Notes under the pieces: generated by a model
The model's database searches: none
What the model was told of the DNA's origin: nothing
Seen by the model: the letters and a program-made list of their open reading frames with translations, nothing else
In this document: one piece after another, positions 19,686 to 63,860 of the stretch
Layout: every line of letters begins with the position of its first letter
Position numbering within the stretch: the first letter of the stretch is position 1
Assembly: GCF_030144855.1 (NCBI RefSeq)
Contig: NC_082731.1
Coordinates: 25,296,001 to 25,360,000 of the forward strand
DNA length: 64,000 bases
DNA from: Hypanus sabinus
Lineage: Eukaryota
Direction: 5' to 3'
Position numbers and translations under genes: made by a program

Positions 19686-19693
19686 CATATAAA
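19686..19693 (+). promoter_or_regulatory. TATA-like box upstream of the NAR V1 leader
   Basis: CATATAAA about 30 bp upstream of the ATG at 19719. Confidence 0.4.
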
Positions 19694-19718
19694 CATTCTG
19701 ACACCGGGAGACGAAACG

Positions 19719-19761
19719 ATGAACTTCCTCTTGAGTGCAACGTTCTGCCTCTGCTTTCGCC
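19719..19761 (+). CDS. Leader exon of NAR-TCR V1 (MNFLLSATFCLCFR)
   Basis: ATG + hydrophobic 14 codons + phase-1 donor GTGAGT; splices in frame to the V1 acceptor, giving MNFLLSATFCLCFRLVFSQSV, which resembles IgNAR leaders. Confidence 0.9.
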
Positions 19762-19903
19762 GTGAGTACCGTTTACAGTTTTGCCCAGGTTGCAAGTGAC
19801 AGATAAAACGGAACAATTTGAAAATTCAATAAGTCATAGCATTAGTTGTCTTGGGTGTTTTACATCTAATGACGCTTCGCTTCTCCATACTCTTCATTTC
19901 CAG

Positions 19904-20200
19904 TCGTCTTCAGCCAGTCCGTGATCCAGAGCCCGACAATGGTGACGAAAAATGAATGTCAGTCTCTCAGCATCACATGCAGGTTCCAAAAAAAATGGAG
20001 AAGCGATCAATTTATAACCGGAGAGTTCTTCATTCAGCCGCAGACAGGAACGGGGAGAGAGCTGATCCAAACCGGAGGAAAAATTATTATAACGGAAAAT
20101 AAAGCAGAAATGACAACCACCATGAAAATTATGAATCTTGGAGTTAAGGACAGCGCCACCTATTTCTGTAAAGTTAAATACCGATATGAAACTTACTCTG
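19904..20200 (+). CDS. NARTCRV: NAR-TCR variable segment 1 (IgNAR-like V, no CDR2, extra FR1 Cys)
   Basis: Open exon VFSQSVIQSPTMVTKNECQSLSITC...GGKIIITENK...KDSATYFCK; 47 aa from the Trp-equivalent to the second Cys (59 aa in the neighbouring TCR V), so C'/C'' is deleted; acceptor TTCATTTCCAG. Confidence 0.9.
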
Positions 20201-20239
20201 CACAGAGGTTGGAAAGGGATTCTGGCCGTACTCAAATAC
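20201..20239 (+). other. 23-RSS of NAR V1
   Basis: CACAGAG + 23 nt + CTCAAATAC (non-consensus nonamer). Confidence 0.8.
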
Positions 20240-20548
20240 TCGTTGTAATTTATCCCATCAACAGCTTAAGGCGGGTACTTAATCTTCCGGTAATTGAACG
20301 AAGCACTTCACCAGCGTTCCTTACAGTATCGCATTCAATGGCACAGGATGTTTATTGTTAATACTCGAATTCTTTTTCTCTTTTCTGAATATGCAGGTAT
20401 AATGTCACCTTTCGCATTTTTTTAGCAGCAGTACATGAAATTATTTCCCCACTTAACAATCCCGTACATCAGATGGGACTCTGCTCCGACTGTGTGGAAA
20501 CTGGAATAGCAGTTGGAAAGCTGTTATATTCTGCCCATCCCTGTTCTA

Positions 20549-20619
20549 CATTATTAGCTTGACATGAAACACTGTGGATTTTTGGCACATACACAATAGA
20601 GGATAATGGAACAAAAATT
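20549..20619 (+). other. NARTCRD: NAR-TCR D1 (coding 20577-20591 GATTTTTGGCACATA) with 12/12 RSS
   Basis: Weak nonamer CATTATTAG-12-CACTGTG / D / CACAATA-12-ACAAAAATT; D open in all 3 frames. Confidence 0.85.
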
Positions 20620-20920
20620 TGTGGGCACGATAAAGAATATATTCTAGAGTAGGAAAAAAATATTTTATTTGGGATTACTTTCGCGCTGCAATTCGATGAA
20701 TGCCATTGAACTATTCCACTTTCAGGAATTTTTCTTTGATATTTTCTGCAGTTTAAGGAGTCGACATTCGGAAATGATGATGTGGCATTTTACAATTGTC
20801 CTTTTCTTAGGCTGTTTCACAATAGTCTGTGAAACACTGAATGATATTGTTAATGCTTTAATAGTCTGCCATAGTTTTGTACTGTCCAATAACGGTTGCA
20901 GAATAAAAATAGTTGATGAT

Positions 20921-21014
20921 GATTCTTGTACCAGTGAGAGTGAGAATCGAAGCACGGTGAGTATGGCCACGGGTTATGTAGAAGGAACCGGGTCCAAGGT
21001 CACTGTCACAGCCG
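20921..21014 (+). other. NARTCRJ: NAR-TCR J1 (coding 20960-21014 SMATGYVEGTGSKVTVTA) with 23-RSS and phase-1 donor
   Basis: GATTCTTGT-23-CACGGTG; NAR-type EG-x-G-x-x-V-T-V motif; GTAAGT at 21015. Confidence 0.9.
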
Positions 21015-21091
21015 GTAAGTGTCTCAATTGGCGAAATTAATAAAACATTTTCATCAATGTGCATGCATGGGCATTTTTGCTGAATATATCG

Positions 21092-21125
21092 TTAAATTCA
21101 GATTTAAATTCAGATTAAATTCAGA
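21092..21125 (+). repeat. (TTAAATTCAGA)x3 micro-tandem at the NAR cluster duplication junction
   Basis: Three copies at 21092, 21104 and 21115; the homologous J2 flank (~22495) has a single GTTAAATTGAG. Confidence 0.85.
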
Positions 21126-21142
21126 TTCCTTTCTCTTTTCAC

Positions 21143-21152
21143 GGCTTTCGCC
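21143..21152 (+). pseudogene. Truncated leader remnant of NAR V2 (3' end and donor only, no ATG)
   Basis: GCTTTCGCC|GTGAGTACC matches the end of leader 1; upstream in-frame TAA at 21116-21118 and no ATG after it. Confidence 0.85.
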
Positions 21153-21300
21153 GTGAGTACCGTTTCCAATTTTGCACATTATACGAGTTAAATATAAAAA
21201 TGAACAATTTGGAATTTCATGAATTCAAAGTTGTAGCTGTCTAGCGTGTATTTTTTTTTACATTTAATGCCGCTTCGCTTCTCCATATACTCATTTCCAG

Positions 21301-21597
21301 TCGCCTTCAGCCAGTCCGTGTCCCAGAGCCCGACAGTGGTGACGAAAAATGAATGTCAGTCTCTCACCATCACATGCAGTTTCCACAAACAAACGACATG
21401 CGGTCAATTTATAACCGGACAGTTCTTCAAACAGACGCGGCCAGAAACGGGGAGAGAACCGATCAACACTGGAGGAAGAATTACTACAACGGAAAATGAA
21501 GAAGAAATGACAATTACAAGGACAATTATGAATCTTGAAGTTAAGGACAGTTCCACCTATTCCTGTAAAGTTAAATACCGATATGAACGTTACTTTG
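21301..21597 (+). CDS. NARTCRV: NAR-TCR variable segment 2 (leaderless, intact; FR1 Cys plus CDR1 Cys)
   Basis: Open 297 nt exon AFSQSVSQSPTVVTKNECQSLTITCSFHKQTTCGQ...KDSSTYSCK; acceptor TCATTTCCAG; paralog of V1 at offset 1397. Confidence 0.9.
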
Positions 21598-21636
21598 CAC
21601 AGAGGTTGGAAAGGTATTCTGGCCGTACTCAAATGC
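21598..21636 (+). other. 23-RSS of NAR V2
   Basis: CACAGAG + 23 nt + CTCAAATGC. Confidence 0.8.
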
Positions 21637-21949
21637 TCGCTGTAATGTATCCGAACGACAGCTAAAGGAGGGGACTTAATCTGTCGGTAATTGAACGAAG
21701 CTCTTCCCCTTCGTTCCATACAGTATAGCATATAATGGGACAGGACGTTTACTGTTAATACTCCAGTTCCTTTCTCTTTTCTGAATTTGCAGGTATAAAA
21801 TCACCTTTCACATTTTTCTTTTTTACCAAGAGTAAATGAAATGATTTTCCCTCTTAACAATCCCTTAATTCAGATAGGACACTCCTCCAGCCGCATGGAA
21901 GCTGGAATAGAATTTGGAAACCTGTTATCTCTAGCCCGTACTTGTTCTG

Positions 21950-22019
21950 CGTTTTGAGCTTGTCATGAAACACTGTGGAACGGGGGTTATACACAACAGA
22001 GGATAATCGAACAAAAAAT
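21950..22019 (+). other. NARTCRD: NAR-TCR D2 (coding 21978-21991 GAACGGGGGTTATA) with 12/12 RSS
   Basis: CGTTTTGAG-12-CACTGTG / D / CACAACA-12-ACAAAAAAT; open in 3 frames, encodes no Cys. Confidence 0.85.
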
Positions 22020-22320
22020 TTCCTCCCCGATAAAATAATATATTCTGGTGTCCGGTAAAAATTATATGTTGGATTACTTTGGCGCTGTCATCCGATGAAT
22101 TCCATTGTACTTTTGCACTTTCACGATTTTTTTCTTTGATATTTGCTGCAGTTTATGGAGCCGACATTCGGAAAGTATGATACGGTATTTTTTATTTGAC
22201 GTTTTCTTCGGTAGCTTCACAGTGGTTTCTGAAGCAGCAAACAATGTCGTTAATGTTTTAAAAGTTTGGCTTAGTTGTACACTATCCAATAACGGCTGCA
22301 GAATAGACAGAGTTGAGGAT

Positions 22321-22414
22321 GATTCTTGTACCAGTGAGACTGCGAATCGGAGCACGGTGAGTTCCAAAACTGGCTATCGAGAAGGAACCGGGTCCAGGGT
22401 CACTGTCACAGTCG
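22321..22414 (+). other. NARTCRJ: NAR-TCR J2 (coding 22360-22414 SSKTGYREGTGSRVTVTV) with 23-RSS and phase-1 donor
   Basis: GATTCTTGT-23-CACGGTG; GTATGT at 22415. Confidence 0.9.
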
Positions 22415-23885
22415 GTATGTATCTGAATTGGCGAAATTTATAAAGTATTTTCATCAAATTGCTTGCATGGGCAATGTTGCTGAATATATCAAGTTAAATT
22501 GAGGTTTCGGAGTTGGAAGTTATAAGGTCGGGCTTTTGCAAAATAATGCGTTTATATTGTCAGCCATGAGCACGTATTAGGAAAAGCAGAATTAAAGAGA
22601 AAAAAAACAGCGCATCTGAACCAACGCAGTACAAGCGGAGCAGCAAAGATTCATTCACTTATACAGAGTGGCTATTTGTTTTGTCAGCAGGAGTTATTGG
22701 GAGCAGCAGAAGAAAAGCTAAATTTGGGTCAGCAGTTAGTGCTATCCAGTAAGACGGAGCTTCACAGGGAGGTCATGAGCTGAGTGACTCTGCAGGTCCT
22801 GAGAAACTGCATGTTGGAAGAGTGAGAAAGTATGTCTATCATGTACAAACTCCAGATAAATTTAGTTAGTGAAGACCGCTAGTTGCGAATGAGTCTGACA
22901 GCCACGTGTAAACTGTTATGCAAGCGACATCTAAGAGACTGCAGGAGAACCTTTTAAGATGAGAGGTTATGCAGAAAAAGTAGAACAAGCAGTGTCAGAG
23001 AAATGAAATAAAAACAACACATGATAACTGACGGAACTGTAAGGAAAGCGGAGGATGACCTGGCAGAGGGGAAACATCATAATATTTGCAGATGCTGGAT
23101 ACCCAAGCAAAACACCCAACATGCTAGATCTTCTCCGCAACTAAGGTAGCAGATAGGAATATCCCGATGAAGTAGCTCTGCGCGAAACATCGCCTGTTTT
23201 TCTCTTTTCTATAAATGCTGAGTTCCTTCAGCACTGATGTGTGTTACACCGACAGATTAGGAAGTTTTACCCCTGGGTGTGTGAAATTTAACATTCTGTA
23301 CTCCTTCCACACAAGTCCTTATCCCCAACATGGAATATCATTCATTTCTCTTGGATCCTAATCTGCCAAATCAAAGAGGAAAATATTTGTAGAGTGTGCA
23401 TCAGTCGTTAGAAATAAATATATTTTAATCCTTTTTCTCATTCGTCCTTCCTTTACAAAAACGGCAGAAAGGTAGAACTTTACACAATGTAATAAGATTT
23501 TCCGTCTCACTGGTAAAAGAATCATTCTCAACTCTGTCTTACCAGCAGCAGTTATTGGACTCCATCTCTCGGGGTGCGGGATCTGAGAAATTGTTTCATA
23601 AGGGTTCTATATATTAATTATTACTTCCCGGGAAATTTCACAGTTTCAGCAATTACTTGCAGTAATTCAAAGTCTCCTATTAGTAATATCAATTCTCCTT
23701 CTGCAGCACCTCCCAGTAATGTCCCCACATCAGCAAGTCGCTGGAAGAATTCCCAAAGGCAATAGAAGCATTTTGGAAACATAATGAACTCAGCCTGCCG
23801 GTGTGAACCCTTAAATTATTCCTATATGTGGCGGATCAAGTAATGATTGTCAAGTAATAGTGTTGCCTCCTTTCAATTCCTTTAG

Positions 23886-24191
23886 ATCCATTATCGCTGC
23901 TGTCCAAGAGTCCACGTCTACAGTCTTCTTATTCTAATGAGGTCGTCACCTTAACGTGCGAATATTTCGGGTTTTGTCCATACACGCTACACTGGTACAG
24001 GCAGCTGCAAGCAGAGCCTCCAAAACTTCTGCTCCAGAAACATACCTCTGGAGGTCAGGATCAGAACAATATTGCCGAAGGCCACATCTTCGGTTCTCTC
24101 GATCGTGACAAGAAAATCAGCATGTTAATGATTTCCAAACTACAAGTGAGCGACTCGGCTTTGTATCTATGTGCCCTGAGTCGGAGGGGAG
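23886..24191 (+). CDS. TRDV: Leaderless supporting TCR delta V with non-canonical CDR1 Cys
   Basis: Open exon (D)PLSLLSKSPRLQSSYSNEVVTLTCEYFGFCPYTLHWYRQ...ISKLQVSDSALYLCALSRRG; acceptor TTCCTTTAG in phase 1; no leader exon found between J2 and this V; Cys codon at 23975-23977. Confidence 0.88.
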
Positions 24192-24230
24192 CACAGTGAT
24201 AGACAGGAGGAAGCGGGATGTGCACAAACC
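24192..24230 (+). other. 23-RSS of the supporting V
   Basis: CACAGTG + 23 nt + GCACAAACC. Confidence 0.9.
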
Positions 24231-24385
24231 TCAAAGTGGTGGATTACACAGTGCTTCAGAAGACGAAAGGAACTGTTCAAAAACGTGCAAATGCCAAGAC
24301 CACAGAGAAGAGACCGAGAATTCTGCACCAGACTCTCAGGTTCGCAAAGACGCAAAGTTAAATCTTATGTACAATGTCCTGTGTA

Positions 24386-24973
24386 TGTTACTCAAAATGG
24401 CTTCTTTGGTTCGTTAAGGGTAGGAATGCTTCTTTGTCTGATAAGTGTATCTCTCGAAGTTGTTTACCTTTAGACTTGCTGATATGGGGATTGTATTCAT
24501 TTGTTAACCAATGGGGAATGTTATTTTGACTTGTGAGGCTGTGAAATTCGCGGTCTTTTGAGGAGAATCGAGAGGAAGACGCCGAGGAAGGTGGACTTGC
24601 GCTGCACTGCTTGGTTGACCTCCGGGGGTGGTCCCAGGTGCGAAGACGTGGAGGTCGGAGGCAAGCGACGAGGGTTCGAATGGTTCGATGGTTGAGCTCC
24701 AACGATGTGCACTAAACTGACTGAACTTTGATGTTGGCGCCTTTTGTTTTTTTTTTCTTTCCTTTTATATATATTGTATTGCCTAGTACTCTCTTAGTTT
24801 TAGTAAACTCTAAAGTGTATTTCATAACGGTATCTGGTGTGAATTTGATACTGTGTGCGGGCGCGAGGCATAAACTTGATTAACACAGCACCTGCGTGTA
24901 CGGGAGGTGGGGTTGGTGTGTGGCTGGATCTCCTTTTCCCCTAGATATACCAGCCTGTAGTGTAAGTGTTACA
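24386..24973. mobile_element. Probable solo LTR
   Basis: TG...CA termini (TGTTAC...GTTACA), GC-rich core; no matching TSD found. Confidence 0.45.
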
Positions 24974-29560: not shown

Positions 29561-32500
29561 AATTCTAGGTCAATATCGAAACTTCTGGTATCTGCTTAAC
29601 ATGCACATTCTTCCTTCACTTTGTTGCAGATTAACATGAATGATCAATTGATGTTTGGACACGAATGAAATCAGGGATTATTTGGAAGCAGTAGCAGCTT
29701 CATCACATTCCCTAAAAGAACATGAGTTGTGACGACAACGTGTTTGACTCTTCTATTTGCACCATCTCAGACGCAAATAGAATTTGCGAATTGAAGTAAT
29801 GACTCGCTTGCAGTTGTGTTTTTTTTAGTCCAATGTACAGCTATCACAGTTCACGTCACGATCTCTTTGGAATTGCCAGAAAACATAAATATAATTGATG
29901 ACAACGAAGCAAGAAACTACACTCAAAACTCAGAAGCGACTGTAAGCTATCCACTACCGTCTTTATAATTTTACTTCTACTTTCAGTTTGAGCTCGAATC
30001 ATGCACTACTAAATACTGTACAACAGACGCCTGAGGAAAGAACTCGAGTTCCATCTGGGCAATTTTCTACCTTTCAGAGGCAACGACTAATACGGATCTT
30101 TATCTAACTCACCGTTCTTTACTTTCTTTCTTGATCTTCCCTGCCCTATTGGAACGGCACCTGTGTTGGGTGATGTGCAGCAGTGTATTTGCTGTCGATG
30201 TCTGTCATGCTAAATCCACGGTGCGATATTGAACACCTTAAGGCTGAGGATCGGAAACGAACTCTGCAGATTCGAAATATATGAAGCCTGTATGCAATGC
30301 TTCGTTGTGAAAAATGCGTATTTTCAATTCCACTCGCTATCACTTTGAAGTCAAGAGTTCAGTACGAAATAAACAAAACAACACGCCAAAGCTTCATCCT
30401 ATCCCTGTCCATCGGTTGATTCGATTATTTTGCCTCCTATGTTACTTGACGATGTTCCTCTCCATCTTAAGTACGGGTATAACGAAGGAAATACTTCTTC
30501 TCTCTTTTCCTAGGAACTGACGGAAAACTCTCGTGGTGTTAGTATTCGGAGGTTTAAGAGATTAACATAAGTATTGTTGGCATTGCCGTTTAATGCTACT
30601 GTTTATTGACTTCCTTTGTTTTTTTTAAATTTATTAATTTATCTATGTTATGTTTGCTTGAAAGCTTATATCTATGACTTAAGTTGCTCTTTCTTGCTTA
30701 TCGGGTAATACAATATCTGCCTGGCTATTATGAATTATCATATCGGTAAAGGAGGAATACATCCCTGCTTTAGCACTCCTTTACCCTACTAACATGCAAG
30801 TCACATTTCAGCAGGTTTTTCGCATTCTGAGCGCACGCAAAGTGTCACGTAAAACAATAGATGCCGGTGGTCGTGTTCGTTTGAGCAGCTGGTGCATATC
30901 AAAGTTCTTGGCTATGTGACATCTGAGGTCATGAAGACATTTGCAGAGTAAAATTCATTTTGGCTGGGGTCTCCCGTATTCCAAAGAAACTGCTCAGAAG
31001 AATGCAATGACAAACCACTTCTGAGGAAAGCTTGTCAAGATCAATCCTGAGCTTGAGACCATGATCAGAAAGAAGATATTCGTGACGATACACCTAGAAA
31101 TAGGTTTATCAGGGTATAATTTACAGAAGTCTAGCTGTAAAACTCGATAAGTCTTGTATCTGGAGTAAGATATGGTCTTTTTAATTAGATTGTATTTTCA
31201 ATCAAGGTTAAGATGAATGATGCTTCACACTGGTCTCTCCCTGAGTACGCAATCGGTGGTGTTTAGATTCCTTCGGGATACTGTAACGTTGGGTATGCTT
31301 TTTAGTTTCTCCTGGCATTTTCTGCATTTAACATCTTGTATTTGTTTATCATTTATAATGCATTTTGATATATTTTGAGTTAATAGGCTTGTCATGTTTT
31401 GCCATAAGGATCCACTGTGTATCTTAGTAGAGGCCTCAGATTTTGCACCATGCGTTTGAGGAATTCCTGTCGATAACTAGTCTGATCGGATCGCCATTCG
31501 TTGAGAATATATCCTTACAATATTTATCACACCGTTGTGTATATTTTTTTAAATATATTATATCGCTCTTCGTACTTCTGGATTAAATGGGTCGATTTCA
31601 CAAGGTGTTCTTATTTTTCATTTAAATTTCAAAGTCGGTATCATACCAAAATATTCTGCCAAAAGAACACATTGATAGAACTGGAGCAAAGCTGTAAATT
31701 GTTTTATGGTGCTCCCAATGCAGAGTGTTACCTCTCAGTTTTTCTTGAGATTATTCTGATTATTCTGTCTAAAGTTTTCCTTTTATCGTGTCATGATCTA
31801 TTTTCTTTGTTTGTTATCCGAGATAAGATTCTTATGCTTCATTTCCATCCAACAGTTCTATTGCATCCTGTTGCTTTATTTTATGTTCTACTCGTTCTAC
31901 TGCACATTCGCATCTAATATTGTTCACCTAACCTTACAAAGTTCTTGTTCCTATAACCAAAAATATTCTTATTATTTGAATTTATTGCTTCAGCAATACT
32001 GGTGAATGAAATGTATGACTTTATATCGTACATCTTCAGAAGTTGTATGAAATTCCAAAATAATTCATTTTGTTATCTCTGATTTGATGCACTATTTTTG
32101 TTTAATCAGTAAATTAGAGAGCGTGCATAAAGCAATACAGAGTCATAGTTGCCTTTGACATTCGCCCTGCAAAAATGGTTCGGATATTGTAATTATGTTG
32201 TTGTGTTTTTTCGGTTGAAAGTATTATTGCCGTGCAAGTTTTAATTTTTGCAGTTTTCCATTTTTTTTTTAGTTTCTCTAATTATTTCCGTAGTTAGCAT
32301 ATTGTTGAGAGTATCAACATCTGTTATTTTTTTGCCAATAATGATCGACTGTTTTCATTGGGCATATAACGTCTGTAATGTCGGCACAATGCCCAGGTAT
32401 TCTGTTCGTGTGGTGTTAGATATCAGCATAATTTTGTCTGTAAGTCAGTTTTGACATCAGCATTCTGTGAAAACTCTCCGTCTGTGTTTTTTCAGTTACG

Positions 32501-35105
32501 GTCTGATGTGCAGCAATTTCTTATGTAATTGAACTTCGGTCAACTATTAGGGAGGTGATATGTTATTAATTTCTTGTATAGCATTGTTGCAGTCTTTAGA
32601 TTGGTTTCATCCTCAGTATTGTGCTAATTCATGTTTTTGGTTGTTTAAACATTCCTTTAGAGAAGGAACGATTGGAAGCAAAATGAAAAATGTTGAAAAA
32701 TGACTTCACAACTACACCCAGACAGCCACACGTCGTCAGGAAAAACAGAATACAGCTCATCGACGACAGAAAGATATTGGAGTTCGATGAACAGGTCCTC
32801 ATTTGGGGATCCACGCGGGAATGCTTTAGTGGGCATTAGGTTCCGTTTTGTCAACATTTTCCATGACAAGAACTAGACAGTAAATACAATTTCCCAGGTC
32901 CGCTTCTCTACTTTCTCAAAAGTGTCCGTAAATTTGGATGCAAACTAAAATTTCACAGATTTCAAATTCAAAACAAAGTAGCAGATCCTACACTAATGCG
33001 TCACAGCCTATTACGATAAACTCGCAGCAAATGGCCAGGTAAAAAAAAATGCAGAAAATGATAGATACAACCCGATCTTTCACAGGCAAAAGTCCCCTCC
33101 ATTATGTTACATGGAACGTTTGCAAAATAAAGCAACATACATAATCAACCACCCATTCTACCCAAGTCATGGTGTCTTCTCCAGTTATGCTAACACAATG
33201 AATTTTGAAGCTTAATTTTCACACGGCCGGTTTCAGGACACAGATATTATCCTAAAGTTTCCGGATACTGATTCATCGTGGTTGAATGCACTGAGCTGAT
33301 TTACGAACTGATTCTACAAACTACAGACTGGCTTTCAAGCACTATTGTTCCTCTTTTTTTGTAATTTGCACAAGTTCTTTTGCACGATGTTTATTTGTCA
33401 TTCAGTGTTTATGTATCTTATCAGTACGTTCGTTTGTATTTATGTAATTTCGTGTAAATGCGTTTAAGAAAAAGTAACTCAAGTTAGTACAACGCAATAT
33501 TCGTATCTGACAATATACTCATTTACTTTGAGGGCAGGGATGCATACCTATTCCCTGGTAAGTTTAGTGGAAACGTTCCATAGCATTATAGGCATTAATG
33601 AAATCAAAACAAAAATCATAATCTAATCTAGTTTAATTATCATGCAGCTGGAAGAGACAACATCCTTTTGCCGTCAAGTTGCAAAACCTTCACAAATTTT
33701 AAAAATAGCAATATTACATGTACCAAAACACCAATCGCGCGAGCGGTCAAGGTCAAGCCGAACTTGGACAGCACAGTGTGGCTCTTCTCCAACTGTCACC
33801 AACTGTGGCAGTCTCAGGCCACCCCGAGGGTACACAGCTCCCATGTCAACGGTCGCTACACGAAACAAGGGTAGCAGGTGTGCGACAAATTATATTATCA
33901 ATCTCCAGCAGGGACTTGTGAACACAAGTGAAAAATTTGAGATAATGTCATTGGCTATACTGCACGAATGTCAATGCGTCCGAGAAGCTGGGAGCAACAG
34001 GTTGTGTAGCCAAGTCACCTGATCCGTACATAATCGTCATCTGAACATCGTTCGATCACTGGGCCGGCTGCGCCTCACATAGCAGTCGAAATAGACCAAT
34101 AATCGAGCAGCTCACTGACGAAGTAGCTCTGCAAAACCAATATTCTTTCAATACGATTGTCTTCTGATTGAAATTAACATTTTGTACAATGAAGGATCCA
34201 TTGGATGGTCCCTGAGAATCCGCTATATTTGGACGTGCCGTTATCTTATAAAAAATTACGTTGTGGAGGCTAACTGCTAAAGAGTCGGATGAAATAATGG
34301 TAGAAGAAAGCAACGTGCTAGTAGGAGAAGGGGACTATGGAGAGGTCATAAATATATACCTTCCGGCACTACTTATAGATGAAACAATTGTGGCTGATGA
34401 TGAAATCAGTGTGAAGAACACGCTAATAGACTGGGTCGGTTAAATAACATTAAAGAAGGTAAGTCCCAAGGCATGATGAAGCATAGTCCAAGTATTTCAG
34501 ACAAAATTGGCGTAAGGCTGTTGGGAGACAGACCATCAATTTCCTGTACCGACAGTTCCTATAAAAAGTCTTCCCCTCTCTTGGAGGTATTCATTTTTAA
34601 TTTCTCTACAACATTGAACCAAAGATCATTTAATTCTGCTTTTTGGAAACTCGTTAACAGAAAGTGACTTTTTCGTATCGACGCAGAAAAAAGCTCTACA
34701 AAATTAACTGAATTAATTTCAAATATAAAGATATTCATCGCATATATGGCAAATCAAATAATCACAGATGGAGCCAATTGAATTTAGAAATCACATAATT
34801 ATTTAATGGACGTCTGTGTCCTTTCAAGATGTTTGAATTGTCGTTTGCAAGAATACAATTGTAACTGGAAGGTTCAGCTGCTGGTGAGTCAGTCACCTGG
34901 CAAAGTATACACAAGAAAGCGAAAGACGCATTCGAAACAAATCAGCAGAAAGAAGGTTAAAAAGCTCAAATTAAGAGATGCTTACAAGAATATTTCCAAT
35001 TCACTGAACATCACTTGAATTTAGTGTTTGTCAATCAGTAAAAATGGAAATAATCTGGCGTCACTGCAACTCTTTATCAGTGCAGGCCGTTGTCAAATAT
35101 AAGCG
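29561..35105 (+). repeat. Old segmental duplication, copy 2 (paralogous to 1-6020)
   Basis: Colinear diverged similarity; lacks the two LINE-tail insertions of copy 1. Confidence 0.9.
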
Positions 35106-49177: not shown

Positions 49178-49487
49178 CCCAGATTTCCACCCTTTCTGTC
49201 ACTCAAAACCAGACTTTAGAAAGAAAAGGATCTGGTGAAATGGTGACTGTAAACTGTGCCTACAGTACTACAAGACTCGACTATTACGTGCATTGGTACA
49301 GACAATCAGCACAGAGTAAACTGCAGTTTATTGTGTGGAAACGTTCCTGGAACTCAGAGGAAATGAAAGGACAGTTGTTACAAAAACGATTCTCTGCAGA
49401 TTTCCACAAGGAGACTTCTGTCTCCAGCTTAACTATCTGGGGTCTCCGTATTGAAGACACTGCTGTGTATTATTGCGCCCTGAGCCT
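49178..49487 (+). CDS. Intact TCR alpha/delta V exon, copy A
   Basis: LSVTQ..VNCAYSTTRLDYYVHWYRQ..RFSADF..LTIWGLRIEDTAVYYCALSL; acceptor TTTTCACAG. Confidence 0.93.
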
Positions 49488-49526: not shown

Positions 49527-52500
49527 AGCTTTATCGCTGGTATTATAATCCTTTTTGGTATCTATTCGTAGGGCATTGGAGATTCAGTTGCCGTGACGCT
49601 AGAGAGAATATTTACACCCGTTAACAGACAGATGGAGCGGAAACCAGATGAACTTCCGAACTTAACGTCAGCGCCTTCTTCACGATGCAAACGAGAAATG
49701 CAATAGATGTCAAATTTCAAGTCTTCTACGAAGACCTGCACCATCTTTGAGCCGCAAGTAACACCAGTGTAAAAGGCAAAGCAGTAGTTAATTACGGAAT
49801 ATTGAATGGGACAGCTGAGGGAACCAAATCACGGGACAAATGTATTTGAAGAGACGTCTTCCTGCATAAAACGTCAAGTACTTAAACAAGTTAAACGCAA
49901 GAATGAAATATCGTTACCATGACTGCCTTATTTCTGGAAATGCCCAGTCAAATTAATAGGCTTCTACTGATCACGAAATAGTTTCTCATGAAATTTATTT
50001 TGTACTACTGTAAACCTACCTACCGCTGAAACAAATTCATGACACACGACATCTCTCTCGTCCTGGAAACATCACCAGAGCATAAGAAAATTAATCCACC
50101 TCTGTGTTCGACTACAGTTTTTTGACAGTAACTCCGCAGTGAATCCCATGATTCCAAGGGAACTTATCGCACACACTTGGACATGGAACTCAATATGTCT
50201 GTTGCAGCTTGATCATTCATTTTCTGACAAACAGATGTCGAACAGCAAGGATAAACATGAAGGACTCCTTCATGAATATCATGAACACTCGTGCGTCAGA
50301 AAGCTGCGTTCTCAGAACATCACTCTCATTTTAATCACTGTCGACACAGAATTACATGTCAATTCCCAGCTCTATCTCCATCTGTTCTTTTGCAGATAGC
50401 AACTGCGTAGCAGGCTATAACACAAATACGAAGGAGTTTAAATGCATTACTGAGATCGATTGACTAAGGATATACTGCCATTGAAAAAAAAACAAAAAAA
50501 AAAAAACCTCGGCGTTAACACAAAAGAAAAGTAGCCAGTCATTGGCTTCAGGAGTACCGGTTTGGGATATGGTACATGTTTATGATTATCACAACTGTTA
50601 TGCGCATGACAGTATTGAGCGATTCGCATAACGACAGGAAAATTTCACTTATGGCCTGATTGTTTCTGAATGTGTTGACTCTATCCTCAACTACCTGAGG
50701 AGGATAAAGAAAATTCGGCATGTACCCATTGATACTTGTTATGCTCTACGGGTGCAGCAATTAAAACATTCTGTCTGGATGGATTGTAGAGTAGTATAGC
50801 ATCTGGAACCTCCAAAACCGACAGAAAAACAATAACTAGCCTCCCCGTCATTCGGTCTGCATTTCTCACAGAACGGAACAGCAGTCAAAATTAACCAAAG
50901 ACAGTTAGCACCCGAAAGTTCTCACAGACCTCCACCTTCCTATCTTGTATAAAATTCATAAGACTTAAAAAACTTAGCACAAGTTTCAGGGACAGATAGT
51001 ACCCAGCAATTTCCACGAGACACATGCATGATATCTTTATTTCTTGACCTCACAGATATCCACGTCATGACTTCGCCATTTATCGTCTCATTGCTCTTTA
51101 ATTTGTAAGTGTAAAACCTTATTCAAAATTTTCTTATTGATTCTCCATTGATCACCGTCAATGTAATTATGTGATCAAATGATGAATATGGTTTGAATAC
51201 AAAGCATATACTTCATTGTGTCTCAGGATATGTGCAAATATTAAACCAAATTTAGCAACTTAACAGTGCTGTGTGTGCTGGACATCGTAAGCTGATGCAC
51301 TTTTCTTAGGAGTACAAAATCTGCCTGTGCCTCGACAAGCAACTGCATAGGAATATAGCGGTCAATGCAATCGACCGGTTAAGAGGCAGCTGTCATGCGG
51401 TGAATGAAAATTATGTAACGATTAGTGTCGATATGAAGTATCAAAATGACAGTGAAATAACACGTATTAGAGACAGGATCATTGGTATTTGGTAAACCAA
51501 GGGATGAGTTGAATGATGATGAGTAGATCGAGGTATGTATGCCAACAGGGTTGAATTGGGAGAGTGAGTTAGTTGAAGGACATAAAGGGCGGAAGAAAAT
51601 CTATCATTCACTTTCTCTATCAGTCAACTAACAGTCACTCGGAACAGGTTTTGGGCACTTCTGCGTAGCGAGTTGATATTCACATGAGGGTTTCCTGAGA
51701 TTATTGAATTATGCACGATTCACTGCTATATGGTTGTACATTCTATGAATCAGAGGCAGGTTTCAAGGGTTACCTCGTACGTCTCTTGACAAAAGGCGGG
51801 TCCCGGCCCGGTACCCTAGAAGGGTGCTGACCCAGGTGTTTCATGTCCTGTGTCTGCGTCTGTCCCTTGAGGAAGAAGGGTCCCTGTTCCATGCCTGGTA
51901 TTCAAAGGCGTAGTCCCGGCTGAGTGTTTCATGTCTTGCGTTTGAGGTTGCGGTGATCAAATGCCCAAGTCTAAAGTGTCCAAGTTCTGGCTGCGGCAAT
52001 CCAAGTCCGAAGAACCGACTGCTGGCCTCGGCGGTCCAAGTGTCCAAGCCCTGGCCGCGGCGTTCCAAGTATCCAAGCACTGGCCGCGGTGCCCCGTGTT
52101 CCTCGAAGTCCACGTGTCCAAGCTCTGTGTTCCTCCAAGTCTCCTTGTGTAGAGTAATAAACTCTATTTTAGTTAACCTTATGAAACCGTGTTGTTTCTT
52201 GCATCTGGGTCCTCCTGTAGCACTCGTGCCCCACGGCACTGGGATACTAAGCTTGAATAAAGTCAAAGCCTATTTAAGAGAGACAATAGAATAGAAGAAC
52301 GAGAAGATGAGACCGCAAGATCCGGCATTCAACTTCGCGACTTAGAATATCATTGATATCTGTATACGTGCATAAAGAACCACTTATAGTTTTCTTTTTC
52401 TGTCTGCTTGTCTATCAGTTTCTCTCGCACGCAATCTCACTGTCCTCACCCCATTTACTCACTCACGCTCTGTCTCTTTCAACGTCTATCTGTATCTAAC

Positions 52501-53720
52501 TTCATTTCTAACTATCTACATTATTCTCTATCTGCATTTGGATCTGAGTCATTTTGTGCTTTCATTTTTCCCCTTTGGTTCCCGATGGCTGTGTCCAGCT
52601 GTGAAATGGAGTTTACGAAACAAAACAATTATGATCGGTATTAGCTCTTTATATTAATAAGATTAGGTTACATCATGGAGACTGGAAAAACATTAATACA
52701 TGTAGACAATATAAACTCATCCAAATATGGTACGTCTTGGATTTTAGTTAATGTAGACACCGTTGACCATAGAATCAGATGGAGCAGGCAATCATCCAGT
52801 TATTCATCAGAAAGAAAAAAAATCTAACTGTTCTAGCTGGGATCCATAAATTTCCCGTAACTGGTAACTTCTCGAAACTAAGTGCCCCCACAAGTCCGGA
52901 TCCAACATATATTTTGTTAGACATTAAAACATTATTACATTGTCATTTAACCATTGATATTTAGCCGATAGCAGTTTAATGTGGATAGAACAGCTTAATG
53001 TCTATAGAAGGTATAAATGCATGAATGATTTCTTTTTTCAAACGCTTTTCTGCACAAAGCAGTTTCATCGATGTGATCCGTATGCTAATTAATAATCTAT
53101 GCTGTTAAGTAAATCTAAAACGTCATACAATTGCACATGAAATATTTACAGATTTGAAGATCTTTCCAATGCATCGCCATTGTCAAATATGTGGAGAAGT
53201 GCAAATAATTAAATAATTATTTTGATCTGACGCAATGCCTCTCATGTATTTATTTTTCCCTGTCTGGTATAAATAAGTTATACCTATTGCCGAAAAACTG
53301 TTACACATTTATTTTTCTACGGATAAATATTTCAGCATTGTCTCCCATTCAACACGAACTATTTGGCCTATTGACATTTCAAGTATCCACGTGATCAAAT
53401 GCTTTTAATTCTAGAATAGCTCTTTATAACCATAACGGGGATAATACTTGCGATAGCCGAAAAATGCATGGTAATCGTTAACTGTAGTAAAGCTGTTACT
53501 TTTTTTCCGTAATGGGTCTCAAATTTTAAGGCTTACACAAACTGTTGGCGATGAGGGCATAGTTCATCTAAGTCCCTTTCTCAATCTATATATTCAGCCA
53601 AAACCTCGCCTTTTGTTGGCGTGCTGAAATGCCTTTCATGGCACCATCGTTCAAAGTTTCCGCTGTCAAATTGTCTTATGGAGTGGTGTTGAACCTTCCC
53701 GGATGGATATCACAGTAGAG

Positions 53721-54141
53721 TTAAGTCACTGACTTCAACCAATCTTCTTTTAACTTACTTATCTCGTGAGAGACTGCGCTGTACATTTTACTCACTGTCA
53801 TTCTTCTGTTACTCACAGTCGTTCTTCTGTTACATTCAGTCTCTCTACAATTTTATCAGCTAAATTCCAAAGACAGCAGTCATTGTGTTAAGATTGACCT
53901 TCAGGATTCCTTTCTTAATATTAAACCTGCAGGTGTCCATTCCGATAACGTGTTGACTTAGCCACTGGTTGGGACAGCAAGACCAGTATGATCACTGAGG
54001 CCGACCTTAGTACCAGCATAGTACTTGGTCCCTCAAGTACATCGACAGGGACTGGAGCGGTAGTTTTCATACTACAGTCCTTCAAGCATGGGCTTCGCCC
54101 CAAGGATCCAGAGTTGATTTACCCCAACCAAAGACACAGCT
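53721..54141 (+). pseudogene. VH-type pseudogene, copy B (V exon from 53933)
   Basis: Duplicate of 39395-39815 with the same stops. Confidence 0.8.
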
Positions 54142-54328
54142 GACACACAATTTGACACAGCTGTTCCTAATTGTGGAGCAAGTCATTTTCTTTTGTTTAT
54201 TATGAATGGTACATCTAAAGAGTTAAGCCGTGCTCTGTTTAATTTCGATGCTTTTTTTGAATTATTCGGTTATTTAAAAACAGATTGAAAATCGATTTTC
54301 AGCGAATCGTTAATTTAAGCAGTGTCCG

Positions 54329-54675
54329 CATTTTTGATTCGGCCTGCTTCATTATGCCTGTAAAGTGGAGTCACTGTTTTGTAAACAAAAGGTTTTTCGT
54401 TCCAAAGCCTCAGCAACTACCTTACTGTTTCTCGAGGTTAACAGTATACCCGCACAGGCTGCCGAATGTAGATTTATATAAAATATAAGCGAATATATAC
54501 CGGACATGTCTGGCTTCAAGAATACACACCGTAGTGTCATTCCTGGCAAGAAAAAAAAACTCGATTACATGAGAGGGAAAGGAAAGCATTTCGCTAATAT
54601 TCTCTAGAGTATTTGTTGGGACATGCCTCACATTGTTAATTGGATAAAATAGCGGTTACCGCCTATAGAGCAGGC
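54329..54675 (+). pseudogene. Decayed DH1 (54329-54410) and DH2 (54608-54675), copy B
   Basis: Duplicates of 40003-40084 and 40283-40350. Confidence 0.5.
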
Positions 54676-54965
54676 TTCCGATCGTTAATTCTGTGGTTTT
54701 GTGTTATCATTCGATCATTATTACTGTTGTTAAGCACCATTTGTGCACATCACTTTCATGAATGTGAAAGAACGAGACCTGGTGATTCATCATATATCAC
54801 TAAGTCTATTGATATTTCGCAGGTATGCCTGAAAGACATCATTATGCTACCTGATATCGGTTAAAATGCTTCCTTTATCGCGCTTATCAATACCGGTGTC
54901 AAATTTGTTTTGAAGAAAATAATACATACATATTTTATCATTTTTGCACGTAATTTAGATTAGCT

Positions 54966-55052
54966 AATAATTGTGCGATACAGCCCAAGGGATGTTGTAC
55001 TGCTACGATATTGAGTACTGGGGAAGAGACATCATTGTGACGGTAACAGATG
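54966..55052 (+). pseudogene. JH-like pseudogene, copy B (YDIEYWGRDIIVTVTD)
   Basis: Retains the WG of the WGxG motif; heptamer TACTGCT; GTAAGT donor. Confidence 0.75.
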
Positions 55053-56221
55053 GTAAGTAACAGATAAGTTTCATTTCAATATCCGTTACAATTGTAATTT
55101 AATTCCACATTTCGGTGATGCTCTCAATTACTCTTTCCTCTACTCATATTCGGCCTTCAATTGAATTCTGCGTTAATTTTGTTTTAATAATTGTGCTGTG
55201 ATGCAGTCACAGAGATTTATGAATTGAGTTTGTTTTAATTTTGACACTAAAATGGGGGTGAATTAGTTCTTATTTGCACAAAGATCAATGCTTCTGCTCT
55301 TATTCAATACGTTGATGCTTTTATATTGTTTGGAATTGCGGCATTGATAAACTAGACCAATGTCTGCCCATCCTCAACAACGGCACATAGCATGTTTCCA
55401 TCTGTTTCTCCGGTTTGTGGAGAATTATTCAAAGCAAAAATTGGTACACTCTGAGACAAAGCAGCAGCAACGATTCCGAAATGTATGTTTACTTGTACCG
55501 TATAACCAACTATTCAAACAGTCTTCAATAAGGCCTGGTGGAGGAATAACTTAAGCTTGCAATCTTTTAAGCTTCACAAACTGAAAAGTTTATTAATCGG
55601 TATTGATTGATCTACAGTGTTGTAATTTGAGCAATATCGGAGTAATACAACACAATTCCTTTTGCAGTCAAATTGATCCATGGAATAATAATCAATATTT
55701 CTACCGTTTTTCAGCGTTACTTCTTTCACCACCTTGGAGCAATAAAGCCGTTAGACAGTGCTGCAAAAGGATGGATCAAGTGGAATTGCGGAGATCGCTT
55801 GCTTGTGAAGCAGAGCCTAAGATCAGAGGTGCAACCTTAAATTAAATGGTCGGATTATTAGAATTGAAATGTGGAGGAATATTTTTTTCAGGGGCGGAAG
55901 GAAAAATCTGTGGAATTAATTGCTATATAAATTTGAGATCACCGCCACGTTATGTGTATTTCTGGAAGAAATTTATAGTTTTATTTTTATGAGTATGCAA
56001 TTTAGACATTATTGGGAGAATGCATGAGAATGGGTGAAACAAAGCATGATCGGTTGTCTATGGAGAGACAATGGTCTACTACATTATCCCCCACTTGCTG
56101 GTAATGTGCAAATATTGATTAATTTAATGTACTTGTAATTATTGTTTTTTCATGTGAAGTAATCAAGTTCTATCAGTCTAGTTTGTGTATTACTAACTTG
56201 TTAGGATGTCTTTGTTTTCAG

Positions 56222-56500
56222 GAAAACAAAGAGTGGTCGTACATCGAATCACAAGTAATTCAAAACATCCTTGTTAGTGTAATAGGTTATCATCTGCCTA
56301 CTGAGGCATCGCCATTTGCAGTCAAGAAATAAAGACGAAAGAGACTGTGATTTGAACTTGCTTCAAGAATATGGCAAGAACTGTTTGTGTGGAAGAAGAT
56401 TTTAAACATGGAAAGTAATTGAGTCATAACACGGACAATTCGATTATCCGTTCCAAAGAGAACTTGTGGCAAGAATCTTCATCTTAAACCTGTTGTCAGT
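56222..56500 (+). pseudogene. Possible decayed Ig constant exon, copy B
   Basis: Duplicate of 41897-42160; TACTAAC at 56191. Confidence 0.35.
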
Positions 56501-57469
56501 ACACCATTATATCATGTTTGCTGAGCTTTCTTTCTTTGAAAGGACACCAACCGTTGCAAGTATATTTCAGACATATTGTTTTCTTTAATTTCTTGTCGTA
56601 AAAGGTTGCTGGACTCCAGATCTTAAATTGTAACTGAAAATCAGCTTGAAGGAAACAAAAACACTCTTCAGCGAACTGATGTACCCATACGGTATATGTT
56701 TTAAGACACATTGAATGCAGAGGGTCACTGCACCTGCTTCATAATAGCTTATCAACAGAGCATAACACAACGGGCTGTTTAATTTAGATTGTTTCAAGAA
56801 GACAAACTGAATCTTTACATGTTTATTGGAAGGATGTTCGGCGAATACATGGATCACAACATTCAATTATCAATGACTGATATGTTTATAGTTTAAAAGT
56901 TGTATTGCCGTTAAGAAATTAGGTTTTAAGCATTATTAGTCGATAGCTAAGATAGATGTCTGGAAAAGATTTTTTTCAACTGAGTGTTTAAAAAGATACT
57001 TGAGTAAATATCACGTAATTGTGAATTTACACAAGCAGCTGAAAAGGTATCAATATATGGAACAGTTCAGGCTTATTAGTAATGGGGCATCAAGAAACAG
57101 GGAAAACTAAAACATATCCAACCAGTTTTGTTGCTTGGAACGGACAACTTGTTTCTCTGCCACTTTGGTGTACTGAATATTTTAGTGAATAGAAAAGGTA
57201 CCCGCGTTTTGGAAATGCATTTATTATTTTTTCTTTATTTGATTTATAACTAATTCCTTAAGTAAAATTGCTTCATAGGTTTTGAAAATAATTTGTGTTC
57301 CAGAATGGTTATTATTTGGAAATTATTGATATCGCTTCACAATTCAAGATAATGATTCAATAATAAAATATACGATGGAAATCCTCTGAGAGTGTTTCAT
57401 GTATTTTAAGAAGGATTTCGGTGTATTTAGGCGTGCTTCACTGAAAATACGTTAACCGGGTTTTACTCC

Positions 57470-61800: not shown

Positions 61801-62196
61801 CATTATAAAAACAATAGTATAAACTAATGCACCCAATGCACCCCCTCCTCGAAATGGAGCCAATGGGAGTGTAACCATTGAATGGCTCCCAGCCTCCTCT
61901 GGCTGCCTTCCTCCGCAGACTACCATTACCTTAATTTCCTCTAGGAGGGGCTTAATTATTGAGTCGGATGAGCCAAGAATAAGACACAATGCGCTCATTC
62001 AAATAGGTCGCATTTTGCAACCAGAACAATGCTAATGCTGAGGGTCCATGACAAATGTTAAGGACATCCGAAACATCGTTGCAGAGGACATTAATCACGC
62101 CGCTGAAGTCGCATCTCGCACATTTATAAACGGACTATCAAAACATACCGGCCTCCAGGTTTCCGTAACTCAATTCATCTGACCCCTGCTAGAACG

Positions 62197-63821: not shown

Positions 63822-63860
63822 CACGGTGAATGAAACTACTTGCCTCCTAGTTCAAAAACT
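63822..63860 (+). other. 23-RSS
   Basis: CACGGTG + 23 nt + TCAAAAACT. Confidence 0.9.

What the first reader, a model, noticed from the sequence alone, without database searches (positions are those of the whole stretch)
19719..24230. Candidate triply rearranging, three-V-domain T-cell receptor (NARV1-NARV2-Vdelta)
Seen: L-V1-D1-J1, then a leaderless V2-D2-J2, then a leaderless supporting TCR V with a 23-RSS. All junctions are phase 1 and in frame: J1(..VTA G|)+V2 gives ..TVTAVAFSQSV.., and J2+supporting V gives ..TVTVDPLSLL... All ORFs, heptamers, spacers and splice sites are intact. Established: shark NAR-TCR is a doubly rearranging TCR delta chain in which one NAR V-D-J is spliced onto one leaderless supporting V-delta with a CDR1 Cys. 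Inference: V2 has become an intermediate supporting domain, so one chain could carry three independently rearranged V domains with three CDR3s. I do not know of such a receptor, but I cannot search the literature.
Basis: partly seen in the sequence, partly recalled or inferred. Interest (0 to 1): 0.95.

Follow-up and report, generated by a model that had tools for sequence, protein, structure and literature searches.

The report
Two-NAR-V, one-Vdelta T-cell receptor cassette
A ray-like fish's T-cell receptor locus has two complete rearranging shark-type (NAR) V-D-J units in a row, the second with no leader or promoter, ahead of one leaderless V-delta, so a delta chain with three variable domains is possible but is not shown by any RNA data.

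Summary
All V exon and J reading frames, RSSs and phase-1 splice sites are intact.

- **Not an artefact.** The two NAR units are 81% identical, so the duplication is old. Contigs from independent whole-genome runs cross the unit junction.
- **Both units look constrained.** RSS heptamers, splice sites and frameworks are more conserved than the background. D coding, the 5' end of J and CDR1 have diverged. V1 and V2 changed equally (7:7) against a Mobula outgroup.
- **New support for a three-V chain.** V2 carries an orphan CDR1 Cys that is absent from the 49 other aligned NAR-TCR V domains. The same Cys, at the same offset, occurs in a leaderless, germline-joined NAR V exon of the horn shark that also lies between an L-V-D-J unit and a supporting V-delta. 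The great white shark has tandem germline-joined NAR V exons with dead leaders and dN/dS of 0.35-0.68.
- **Limits.** I found no RNA evidence and no paper describing this arrangement. Every other cassette inspected was 1:1.

A three-V chain is plausible (about 0.4). It competes with alternative use of the two units in ordinary two-V chains.

The parts
19690..19718 (+). Promoter-proximal region of unit 1 with a TATA-like CATATAAAC box
   Evidence: The box aligns with the same box upstream of NAR-TCR leaders in Heterodontus and, more degenerately, in Pristis and Amblyraja. Unit 2 has no counterpart.
19719..19761 (+). Leader exon L1 (MNFLLSATFCLCFR, phase-1 donor GT at 19762)
   Evidence: The leader is very similar to that of the Mobula hypostoma NAR-TCR gene model P0103.
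19904..20200 (+). NAR-type V1 exon (a-b loop Cys, no WYRK Trp, no CDR1 Cys)
   Evidence: Pfam V-set, E = 3e-7. Translation.
20201..20238 (+). V1 23-type RSS (CACAGAG, 22-nt spacer, ACTCAAATA)
   Evidence: Against unit 2 the heptamer matches 7/7, the spacer 21/22 and the nonamer 8/9.
20549..20619 (+). D1 (20577-20591) with a 5' 12-RSS (weak nonamer CATTATTAG) and a 3' 12-RSS (CACAATA, 12-nt spacer, ACAAAAATT)
20921..21014 (+). J1 23-RSS (GATTCTTGT, 23-nt spacer, CACGGTG) and J1 coding 20960-21014, phase-1 donor at 21015
21092..21152 (+). Duplication junction: a 12-nt tandem repeat (21092-21127), then the 9-nt remnant of the leader exon (21144-21152) with its old donor
   Evidence: No in-frame ATG.
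21301..21597 (+). NAR-type V2 exon. It has no leader or promoter, an intact acceptor, the a-b loop Cys, and an extra CDR1 Cys (TTCG)
   Evidence: Cys census.
21598..21635 (+). V2 23-type RSS (CACAGAG, 22-nt spacer, ACTCAAATG)
21950..22019 (+). D2 (21978-21991) with 12-RSSs on both sides
   Evidence: D coding is only 7/14 identical to D1, while the flanking RSSs are conserved.
22321..22414 (+). J2 23-RSS and J2 coding 22360-22414, phase-1 donor at 22415
23886..24191 (+). Leaderless supporting V-delta exon with a CDR1 Cys (CEYFGFCPYT)
   Evidence: Pfam V-set, E = 2e-10. It is 71% identical to the V-delta part of Mobula P0103 and 64% to Pristis P0078.
24192..24230 (+). V-delta 23-RSS (CACAGTG, 23-nt spacer, GCACAAACC)

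Best explanation
This is a NAR-TCR cassette in the V region of a TCR alpha/delta locus. The species is a batoid whose nearest relative in the databases is Mobula. The NAR V-D-J unit was tandemly duplicated long ago. The breakpoint fell inside the leader exon, so unit 2 has neither promoter nor leader. It kept its splice acceptor, V reading frame, RSSs, D, J and splice donor.

V2 can therefore be expressed only as an internal exon. The mechanism I favour has four steps:
1. RAG assembles V1-D1-J1.
2. RAG assembles V2-D2-J2.
3. RAG joins V-delta to D-delta and J-delta further downstream.
4. The primary transcript from the L1 promoter is spliced L1 / V1DJ1 / V2DJ2 / V-delta-DJ / C-delta.

The product would be a delta chain with three V domains. 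The a-b loop Cys of V1 would bond to the orphan CDR1 Cys of V2. The a-b loop Cys of V2 would bond to the CDR1 Cys of V-delta, as is proposed for ordinary NAR-TCR.

Shown: the anatomy, its age, the signs of constraint on unit 2, and the Cys pattern. Inferred: that all three rearrangements occur on one chromosome, that J1 splices to V2, and the disulfide ladder. The same locus will also yield two-V chains, and their share is unknown.
For: - **Anatomy.** The elements are intact and in frame. V2 has no leader, no usable ATG and no promoter.
- **Age and constraint.** The duplication is 81% identical. The four heptamers match at 27/28 positions, the J nonamer at 9/9 and the V spacer at 21/22, against 77-81% in intergenic DNA. 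D coding (7/14) and the 5' end of J have diverged, as expected for two working units.
- **V2 versus neutrality.** The V2 frame has no stop or indel. Neutral simulation gives 0.17-0.22 for keeping no stop and both canonical Cys. Multiplied by my estimate of about 0.2-0.3 for no indel, taken from the gaps in the non-coding alignment, this is roughly 0.04-0.07.
- **Equal rates.** V1 and V2 have equal unique changes against Mobula, 7:7, so V2 is not decaying faster than the leader-bearing V1.
- **Orphan Cys.** The V2 CDR1 Cys has no germline partner in D2, J2 or the end of V2. In a 50-row alignment of NAR V plus supporting V-delta, 49 rows have the a-b Cys and 48 have the V-delta CDR1 Cys. The only NAR V with a CDR1 Cys is the leaderless horn-shark V2b, at the same offset (8 residues after Cys23) as window V2.
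- **Horn shark (L001).** The order is leader, V1, D, J1, then two leaderless germline-joined NAR VDJ exons with phase-1 acceptor and donor, then a supporting V-delta.
- **Great white shark (L002).** At least three tandem germline-joined NAR VDJ exons have leaders killed by three different lesions. Their V frames are intact, with dN/dS 0.35-0.68 at dS 0.21-0.26.
Against: - No transcript evidence exists. Both run searches found only DNA-like runs, and no contig joins 21014 to 21301.
- No protein in 5.8 billion sequences resembles a spliced product of this locus.
- Three productive joins on one allele are needed, about 1 in 27 by reading frame alone.
- V1's 23-RSS can join D2's 12-RSS, and D1's 3' 12-RSS can join J2's 23-RSS. 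Either event deletes V2 and gives ordinary two-V chains.
- dN/dS between V1 and V2 is 1.8, which is not significantly different from 1.
- All other cassettes inspected are 1:1: Pristis (three), Amblyraja, Rhincodon, and Mobula judged by gene span.
- The CDR1 Cys aligns with the type II IgNAR CDR1 Cys, which pairs with a CDR3 Cys, so another use for it is conceivable.
- The horn-shark copy nearest J1 carries a stop codon.
- The great white shark exons have no CDR1 Cys.
Confidence: 0.42

Rival explanations
1. The two NAR units are alternatives, and only two-V chains are made. The duplication adds combinatorial choice. V1 joins D1 or D2 and J1 or J2 by deletion. V2DJ2 is expressed by leader-to-V2 splicing when V1 is unrearranged, because a germline V1 exon has no donor and is skipped. 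V1DJ1 splices past an unrearranged V2 straight to V-delta.
For: - The RSS layout, V(23)-(12)D(12)-(23)J in both units, permits every cross-unit deletional join.
- Leader-to-V2 splicing is in frame and gives a normal-looking signal peptide junction.
- All published NAR-TCR descriptions I could search have two V domains.
- The cDNA-like database proteins P0074, P0076 and P0100 are two-V chains.
- The rival needs fewer productive joins.
Against: - It leaves the orphan CDR1 Cys of V2 unexplained. That Cys is absent from the 49 other aligned NAR V domains and shared only with the horn-shark leaderless V2.
- Leader-to-V2 splicing must skip the nearer, intact V1 acceptor.
- When both units are rearranged, the J1 donor meets the V2 acceptor only 286 nt away, so a three-V product is the default splice.
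- The germline-joined leaderless exons in the horn shark cannot be switched off by leaving them unrearranged.
Confidence: 0.38
2. V2 is an unexpressed relic of the duplication. Only D2 and J2 are kept by selection, because V1 uses them. The V2 exon is intact by chance or through occasional gene conversion from V1.
For: - V2 has no leader and no promoter.
- dN/dS between V1 and V2 is not below 1.
- Synonymous divergence (0.096) is lower than intron divergence, which could reflect gene conversion.
- V2 has YSC where relatives have YFC or YYC.
Against: - The joint chance of keeping no stop, no indel and both canonical Cys is roughly 0.04-0.07 under neutrality (plus my indel estimate from the alignment).
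- The acceptor and the V2 RSS heptamer and spacer are conserved above background.
- V2 has not changed faster than V1 (7:7).
- Framework regions differ less than CDR1.
Confidence: 0.15
3. The tandem arrangement is an assembly error.
For: The region is repetitive and lies in a multigene locus. No run holding the exact window sequence at high share was available.
Against: - The units differ at 19% of positions and by several indels.
- Independent WGS-like contigs cross from the J1 intron through the truncated leader into V2 (X22 record 21, X2 record 11).
Confidence: 0.02

Closest known systems
Shark/chimaera NAR-TCR (doubly rearranging TCR delta; Criscitiello et al. 2006, as described in PMC1845163 and PMC12227049)
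   Same: It has a NAR-type V with a leader, an a-b loop Cys and no WYRK Trp, plus its own D and J and a phase-1 J donor. It has a leaderless supporting V-delta with a CDR1 Cys and a 23-RSS. It lies among conventional TCR alpha/delta V segments. The V(23)-(12)D(12)-(23)J layout and the dimensions match the Pristis and Heterodontus cassettes read here.
   Different: Here two NAR V-D-J units precede one V-delta. The second unit has no leader or promoter and carries a CDR1 Cys. The known receptor has one NAR V, giving three extracellular domains. This locus could encode four.
TCR mu of marsupials and monotremes (V-mu on a supporting V-mu-j or V-mu2; PMC7615758)
   Same: An extra V domain is stacked on a supporting V in a delta-like chain. 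Platypus has a rearranging supporting V and marsupials a germline-joined one. The window (rearranging V2) and the horn shark (germline-joined V2) show the same contrast. The AF2 model of horn-shark V2b plus V-delta has its highest query-normalised TM-score (0.46) among the listed top PDB matches against the marsupial TCR chain 7k0z_A.
   Different: TCR mu has an independent origin. Its V domains are VH-like, not NAR. It has two V domains, not three, and sits at a separate locus.
Type II IgNAR V domains
   Same: These are the best solved-structure relatives of V2 (E = 1e-11). Their CDR1 Cys aligns with the V2 CDR1 Cys.
   Different: In IgNAR that Cys pairs with a D-encoded CDR3 Cys. D2, J2 and the end of V2 encode no Cys. 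There are no IgNAR C exons here. The a-b loop Cys and the splice onto V-delta are TCR-type features.
Heterodontus francisci cassette found here (GCA_036365525.1 CM071069.1, locus L001); I found no paper on it
   Same: The order is leader, V1, D, J1, then leaderless NAR V exon(s) with a phase-1 acceptor and donor and a CDR1 Cys at the same offset, then a supporting V-delta. In both species the duplicate begins at or within about 10 nt of the 3' end of the leader exon.
   Different: The intermediate exons are germline-joined VDJ with no RSS. There are two copies and one has a stop codon. The lineage groups with lamniform joined NAR Vs, whereas window V1 and V2 are each other's sisters.
Engineered dual-variable-domain antibodies (DVD-Ig, CODV)
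   Same: V domains are stacked in tandem on one chain. They are among the best fold matches of the two-domain model (5hcg_H, 4hjj_H).
   Different: They are man-made and carry paired VH/VL at each level.

Membership tests
NAR-TCR (TCR delta with a NAR V on a supporting V-delta) | The membrane-distal V is NAR-type: VNAR-like, with a Cys in the a-b loop and without the Trp of the WYRK motif | tested here: met
   V2's best PDB relatives are VNARs (E = 1.4e-11). V1 and V2 both have KNEC in the a-b loop and FFIQ or FFKQ in place of WYRK. The criteria come from PMC1845163.
NAR-TCR (TCR delta with a NAR V on a supporting V-delta) | The NAR V has its own leader and its own D and J with RSSs obeying the 12/23 rule | tested here: met
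   Met for unit 1. Unit 2 has the D, J and RSSs but no leader.
NAR-TCR (TCR delta with a NAR V on a supporting V-delta) | The J of the NAR unit ends in a splice donor in phase with a leaderless supporting V-delta that has a CDR1 Cys and its own RSS | tested here: met
   The J2 donor at 22415 and the V-delta acceptor at 23885/23886 are in frame. The V-delta has CEYFGFC in CDR1 and a 23-RSS.
NAR-TCR (TCR delta with a NAR V on a supporting V-delta) | It lies in the TCR alpha/delta locus and is expressed with C-delta | tested here: inconclusive
   Two conventional TCR-type V segments with RSSs lie downstream on the same strand (49198-49485 and 63532-63819). No C-delta is in the window and no RNA is available.
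   The runs that held the region were DNA-like. The one RNA-labelled run matched only a 30-nt repeat.
   V2 has both and V1 has only the a-b Cys. In the 50-row alignment the only NAR V with a CDR1 Cys is the horn-shark leaderless V2b; the other 49 lack it.
   RSS and splice sites are conserved above background. Change relative to V1 is equal, 7:7. The neutral-survival estimate is about 0.04-0.07 (plus my indel estimate). However, dN/dS is 1.8 and not significant.
IgNAR heavy-chain cluster | V-D-D-D-J followed by IgNAR constant exons | tested here: not met
   Each unit has a single D. Each J splices onto another V exon. No C-type Ig exon lies in the window.

The most novel reading that the evidence does not exclude
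Some elasmobranchs make TCR delta chains with more than one NAR V domain stacked on the supporting V-delta, held by a ladder of a-b-loop-to-CDR1 disulfides. In this ray both NAR domains rearrange, giving three CDR3s on one chain. In the horn shark the middle domain has been germline-joined. This repeats the platypus-to-marsupial transition seen in TCR mu. It would be a second case of germline-joined V genes in a TCR, which a 2023 review says are known only for TCR mu.
Probability: 0.4. Interest if true: 0.92.

Novelty: new variant of a known kind. Interest (0 to 1): 0.77.

Why it matters
All known antigen-receptor chains carry one V domain, except NAR-TCR and TCR mu, which carry two. A chain with three independently diversified V domains would extend the known limits of receptor architecture and of V(D)J regulation, because it needs three ordered rearrangements within 4.5 kb plus the delta D-J join.

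It would also give natural precedents for the stacked single-domain binders that are now engineered. The shark parallels found here suggest that leaderless internal NAR V exons arose more than once. They also suggest that germline joining of TCR V genes is not confined to marsupials.

Even if only two-V chains are made, the locus shows how a tandem duplication inside a cassette creates new V/D/J choice. The question can be settled with one long-read cDNA experiment.

Tried and rejected
**RNA evidence**
- Both run searches and the single read-laying run (16) returned only WGS-like contigs. No spliced joints were seen. The one RNA-labelled run (X21, another organism) matched only a 30-nt repeat.
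- A lone contig joint, 19734 to 21251 (X1, 38 nt on the shorter side), is too weak to interpret.

**Searches that returned nothing usable**
- V2 alone against the 5.8-billion-protein set found no candidate.
- The representative search had no hit above 45% identity, so no close relative of this species is in those sets.

**NCBI gene models are not evidence of real VDJ joining or splicing**
- The ~234-aa models of the form leader, NAR V, DJ, V-delta looked germline-joined. In Pristis they are stitched across RSSs by invented introns.
- Only the horn-shark and great white exons, which I read directly as continuous V-to-J frames, count as germline-joined.

**Candidate leaderless NAR Vs that turned out ordinary**
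- Amblyraja P0105, Pristis P0007 and Rhincodon P0077 all have ordinary leaders upstream.

- DNA for Mobula P0103, Carcharodon P0054 and Heterodontus P0042 could not be fetched.

**Other ideas dropped**
- An own start codon for V2 is ruled out. The nearest upstream ATGs either hit a stop or end in the wrong phase.
- The inverted copy of the J2 RSS at 23496-23539 is not a conserved cassette feature. It is absent from five other cassettes.
- The longer V2 branch in the tree is not backed by the relative-rate count.
- The AF2 model of horn-shark V2b plus V-delta is confident (pLDDT 89.5), but its coordinates are not exposed, so Cys-Cys distances could not be measured.
- I did not model the window's three-V product. 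It has no contiguous reference and would have had to be typed in.

Full report
**What is there.**
- Unit 1: a 43-nt leader exon (19719-19761, phase-1 donor); a 297-nt V1 exon (19904-20200) with an RSS of CACAGAG, 22-nt spacer and ACTCAAATA; D1 (20577-20591) with 12-RSSs on both sides; J1 (20960-21014) behind a 23-RSS, ending in G|GTAAGT.
- Unit 2: V2 (21301-21597), D2 (21978-21991) and J2 (22360-22414), built the same way.
- Supporting V: a leaderless V (23886-24191) with CACAGTG, 23-nt spacer and GCACAAACC.
- Conceptual splicing gives ..TVTAVAFSQSV.. and ..TVTVDPLSLL.., both in frame.
- The V(23)-(12)D(12)-(23)J layout obeys the 12/23 rule. It is the same layout I read in horn-shark and sawfish NAR-TCR cassettes.

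**What kind of genes these are.** V1, V2 and the third V are V-set domains. V2's best solved relatives are shark VNARs (E = 1.4e-11), well ahead of TCR or antibody V domains. V1 and V2 have the a-b loop Cys and lack the WYRK tryptophan. The third V is leaderless with a CDR1 Cys. PMC1845163 gives exactly these criteria for NAR-TcRV and its associated V-delta. Two conventional TCR-type V segments with RSSs lie downstream on the same strand, so this is the V region of a TCR alpha/delta locus. The nearest database relative is a Mobula hypostoma gene model with an almost identical leader. It is 62% identical to V1, 59% to V2 and 71% to V-delta, with Pristis next. The window therefore comes from a batoid, probably close to the myliobatiforms.

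**The duplication is real and old.** Unit 1 (19753-21105) and unit 2 (21144-22507) are 80.8% identical over 1369 nt, with several indels. The copy starts 9 nt before the end of the leader exon, at a short 12-nt tandem repeat. V2 therefore inherited the intron and acceptor but no start codon. The upstream frame is full of stops. The TATA-like box conserved upstream of NAR-TCR leaders in other species is missing. Contigs from three WGS-like runs cover introns and intergenic DNA. Two of them run from the J1 intron across the junction into V2. An assembly artefact is effectively excluded.

**Is unit 2 maintained?**
- Across the two units the heptamers match at 27 of 28 positions, the J nonamer 9/9, the V spacer 21/22 and the D spacers 11/12 each. 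Intergenic DNA matches at only 77-81%. D coding (7/14) and the 5' end of J are the most diverged parts. This is the pattern expected for two working units.
- The V exons are 86% identical in DNA and 68% in protein. Differences are concentrated in CDR1. dN/dS is 1.8, not significantly above 1.
- Neutral simulation gives 0.17-0.22 for V2 keeping no stop and both canonical Cys. With my estimate of about 0.2-0.3 for no indel, taken from the gaps in the alignment, the joint chance is roughly 0.04-0.07.
- With Mobula as outgroup, V1 and V2 each have 7 unique changes. V2 has not drifted faster than the leader-bearing V1.
- Together this makes a dead V2 unlikely but not excluded.

**A new argument from the cysteines.** V2 has a Cys in CDR1, 8 residues after Cys23. 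V1 does not. Neither D2, J2 nor the end of V2 encodes a partner.
- In a 50-row alignment of NAR V plus supporting V-delta from about 20 elasmobranch species, 49 rows have the a-b loop Cys and 48 have the V-delta CDR1 Cys. This is the putative interdomain pair.
- The only NAR V in that alignment with a CDR1 Cys is a leaderless exon from the horn shark.
- A three-V chain would pair every Cys: V1 a-b with V2 CDR1, and V2 a-b with V-delta CDR1.
- The caveat is that this position aligns with the type II IgNAR CDR1 Cys, which pairs with CDR3.

**Parallels found in sharks.** The representative search returned a Heterodontus francisci model whose peptide runs from a J straight into a NAR V. The DNA (L001) shows a leader, V1 with a 23-RSS, a D with two 12-RSSs and J1. 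Two leaderless NAR exons follow in which V, D and J are already fused in the germline. Each has a phase-1 acceptor and donor and the CDR1 Cys. One copy carries a TGA stop. A supporting V-delta comes next. The duplicated unit again begins at the 3' edge of the leader exon.

In Carcharodon carcharias (L002) at least three germline-joined NAR VDJ exons stand in tandem before one V-delta. Their leaders are dead in three different ways: a lost donor; an early stop plus a lost donor; and ATG changed to ATT. The V frames, acceptors and donors are intact, with pairwise dN/dS of 0.35-0.68 at dS 0.21-0.26. In the tree the horn-shark leaderless V groups with this lamniform lineage with modest support. 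Window V1 and V2 are sisters at 100/99, so the ray duplication looks independent or has been homogenised.

Not every cassette is like this. Three Pristis cassettes, one Amblyraja and one Rhincodon are 1:1 with normal leaders. The Mobula gene spans only 3.0 kb.

**What could not be shown.** No RNA data could be laid on the locus. No database protein looks like a spliced product of it. The NCBI models cannot be trusted for splicing because in Pristis they bridge RSSs with invented introns. The anatomy equally allows V1-to-D2 or D1-to-J2 deletions, leader-to-V2 splicing, or J1-to-V-delta splicing, all of which give normal two-V chains. An AF2 model of the horn-shark V2b plus V-delta is confident (pLDDT 89.5). 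Its highest query-normalised TM-score among the listed top PDB matches is with the marsupial TCR chain 7k0z_A, with engineered dual-V antibodies close behind. This says nothing about a third domain.

**Literature.** Searches for NAR-TCR, NARTCR, 'doubly rearranging', 'triply rearranging', 'three V domains', 'tandem NAR' and 'germline-joined' found only the two-V description. A 2023 paper states that marsupial TCR mu is the only TCR known with germline-joined V genes (PMC7615758). The 2006 discovery paper and the 2021 Immunogenetics review are not held, so prior mention there cannot be excluded.

**Verdict.** It is a new variant of the NAR-TCR cassette.

| Reading | Probability |
|---|---|
| A three-V chain is made | about 0.42 |
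| The two units are used as alternatives in two-V chains | about 0.38 |
| V2 is a relic | about 0.15 |
| Assembly artefact | about 0.02 |

One long-read cDNA experiment would decide between them.

Noticed in passing
L001:10851-12315 (Heterodontus francisci, GCA_036365525.1 CM071069.1): Two leaderless NAR V exons in which V, D and J are fused in the germline. They are 94% identical in protein, and one has a TGA stop. They lie between a rearranging L-V-D-J unit and a supporting V-delta. Germline-joined V genes in a TCR are said to be known only for marsupial TCR mu (PMC7615758).
   Followed up: partly
L002:5879-15543 (Carcharodon carcharias, GCA_017639515.1 CM029991.1): A tandem array of germline-joined NAR VDJ exons. 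Their leaders are inactivated by three different lesions. The V frames are intact and under purifying selection (dN/dS 0.35-0.68). A single V-delta follows. Basking-shark and great white gene models (P0047, P0051) share an almost identical joined CDR3.
   Followed up: partly
window:23496-23539: An inverted copy, 89% complementary, of the J2 RSS nonamer and spacer region (22305-22348). It lies between J2 and V-delta. It is absent from five other cassettes checked, and its origin is unexplained.
   Followed up: partly
window:37485-49666 and 51792-64000: A 12.2-kb segmental duplication, 97.8% identical. Each copy carries a conventional TCR-type V segment (49198-49485 and 63532-63819) with an RSS.
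   Followed up: partly
window:2-4843 and 29562-34203: An older duplication of about 4.7 kb at roughly 79-81% identity. This is the same divergence as the NAR unit duplication, so the events may be of similar age. Its content was not identified.
   Followed up: no
window:22944-23271 and 24256-24400: Summed contig depth in the WGS runs jumps to hundreds or thousands here, which indicates high-copy interspersed repeats. A 30-nt piece (23086-23115) also occurs in an RNA-labelled run of another organism.
   Followed up: no
window:19500-24400 (runs X1, X2, X22): Many contigs lie on the cassette at 90-95%, at 95-99% and at 99% or more. This suggests paralogous cassettes or very divergent haplotypes in the same species label. 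One X1 contig joins 19734 to 21251.
   Followed up: no
L003, L004 (Pristis pectinata) and the NCBI gene models P0078 and P0085: The automatic gene models for NAR-TCR cassettes bridge V, D and J of unrearranged DNA with invented introns and read into RSSs. Their CDR3 regions, and any Cys in them, are not real.
   Followed up: yes
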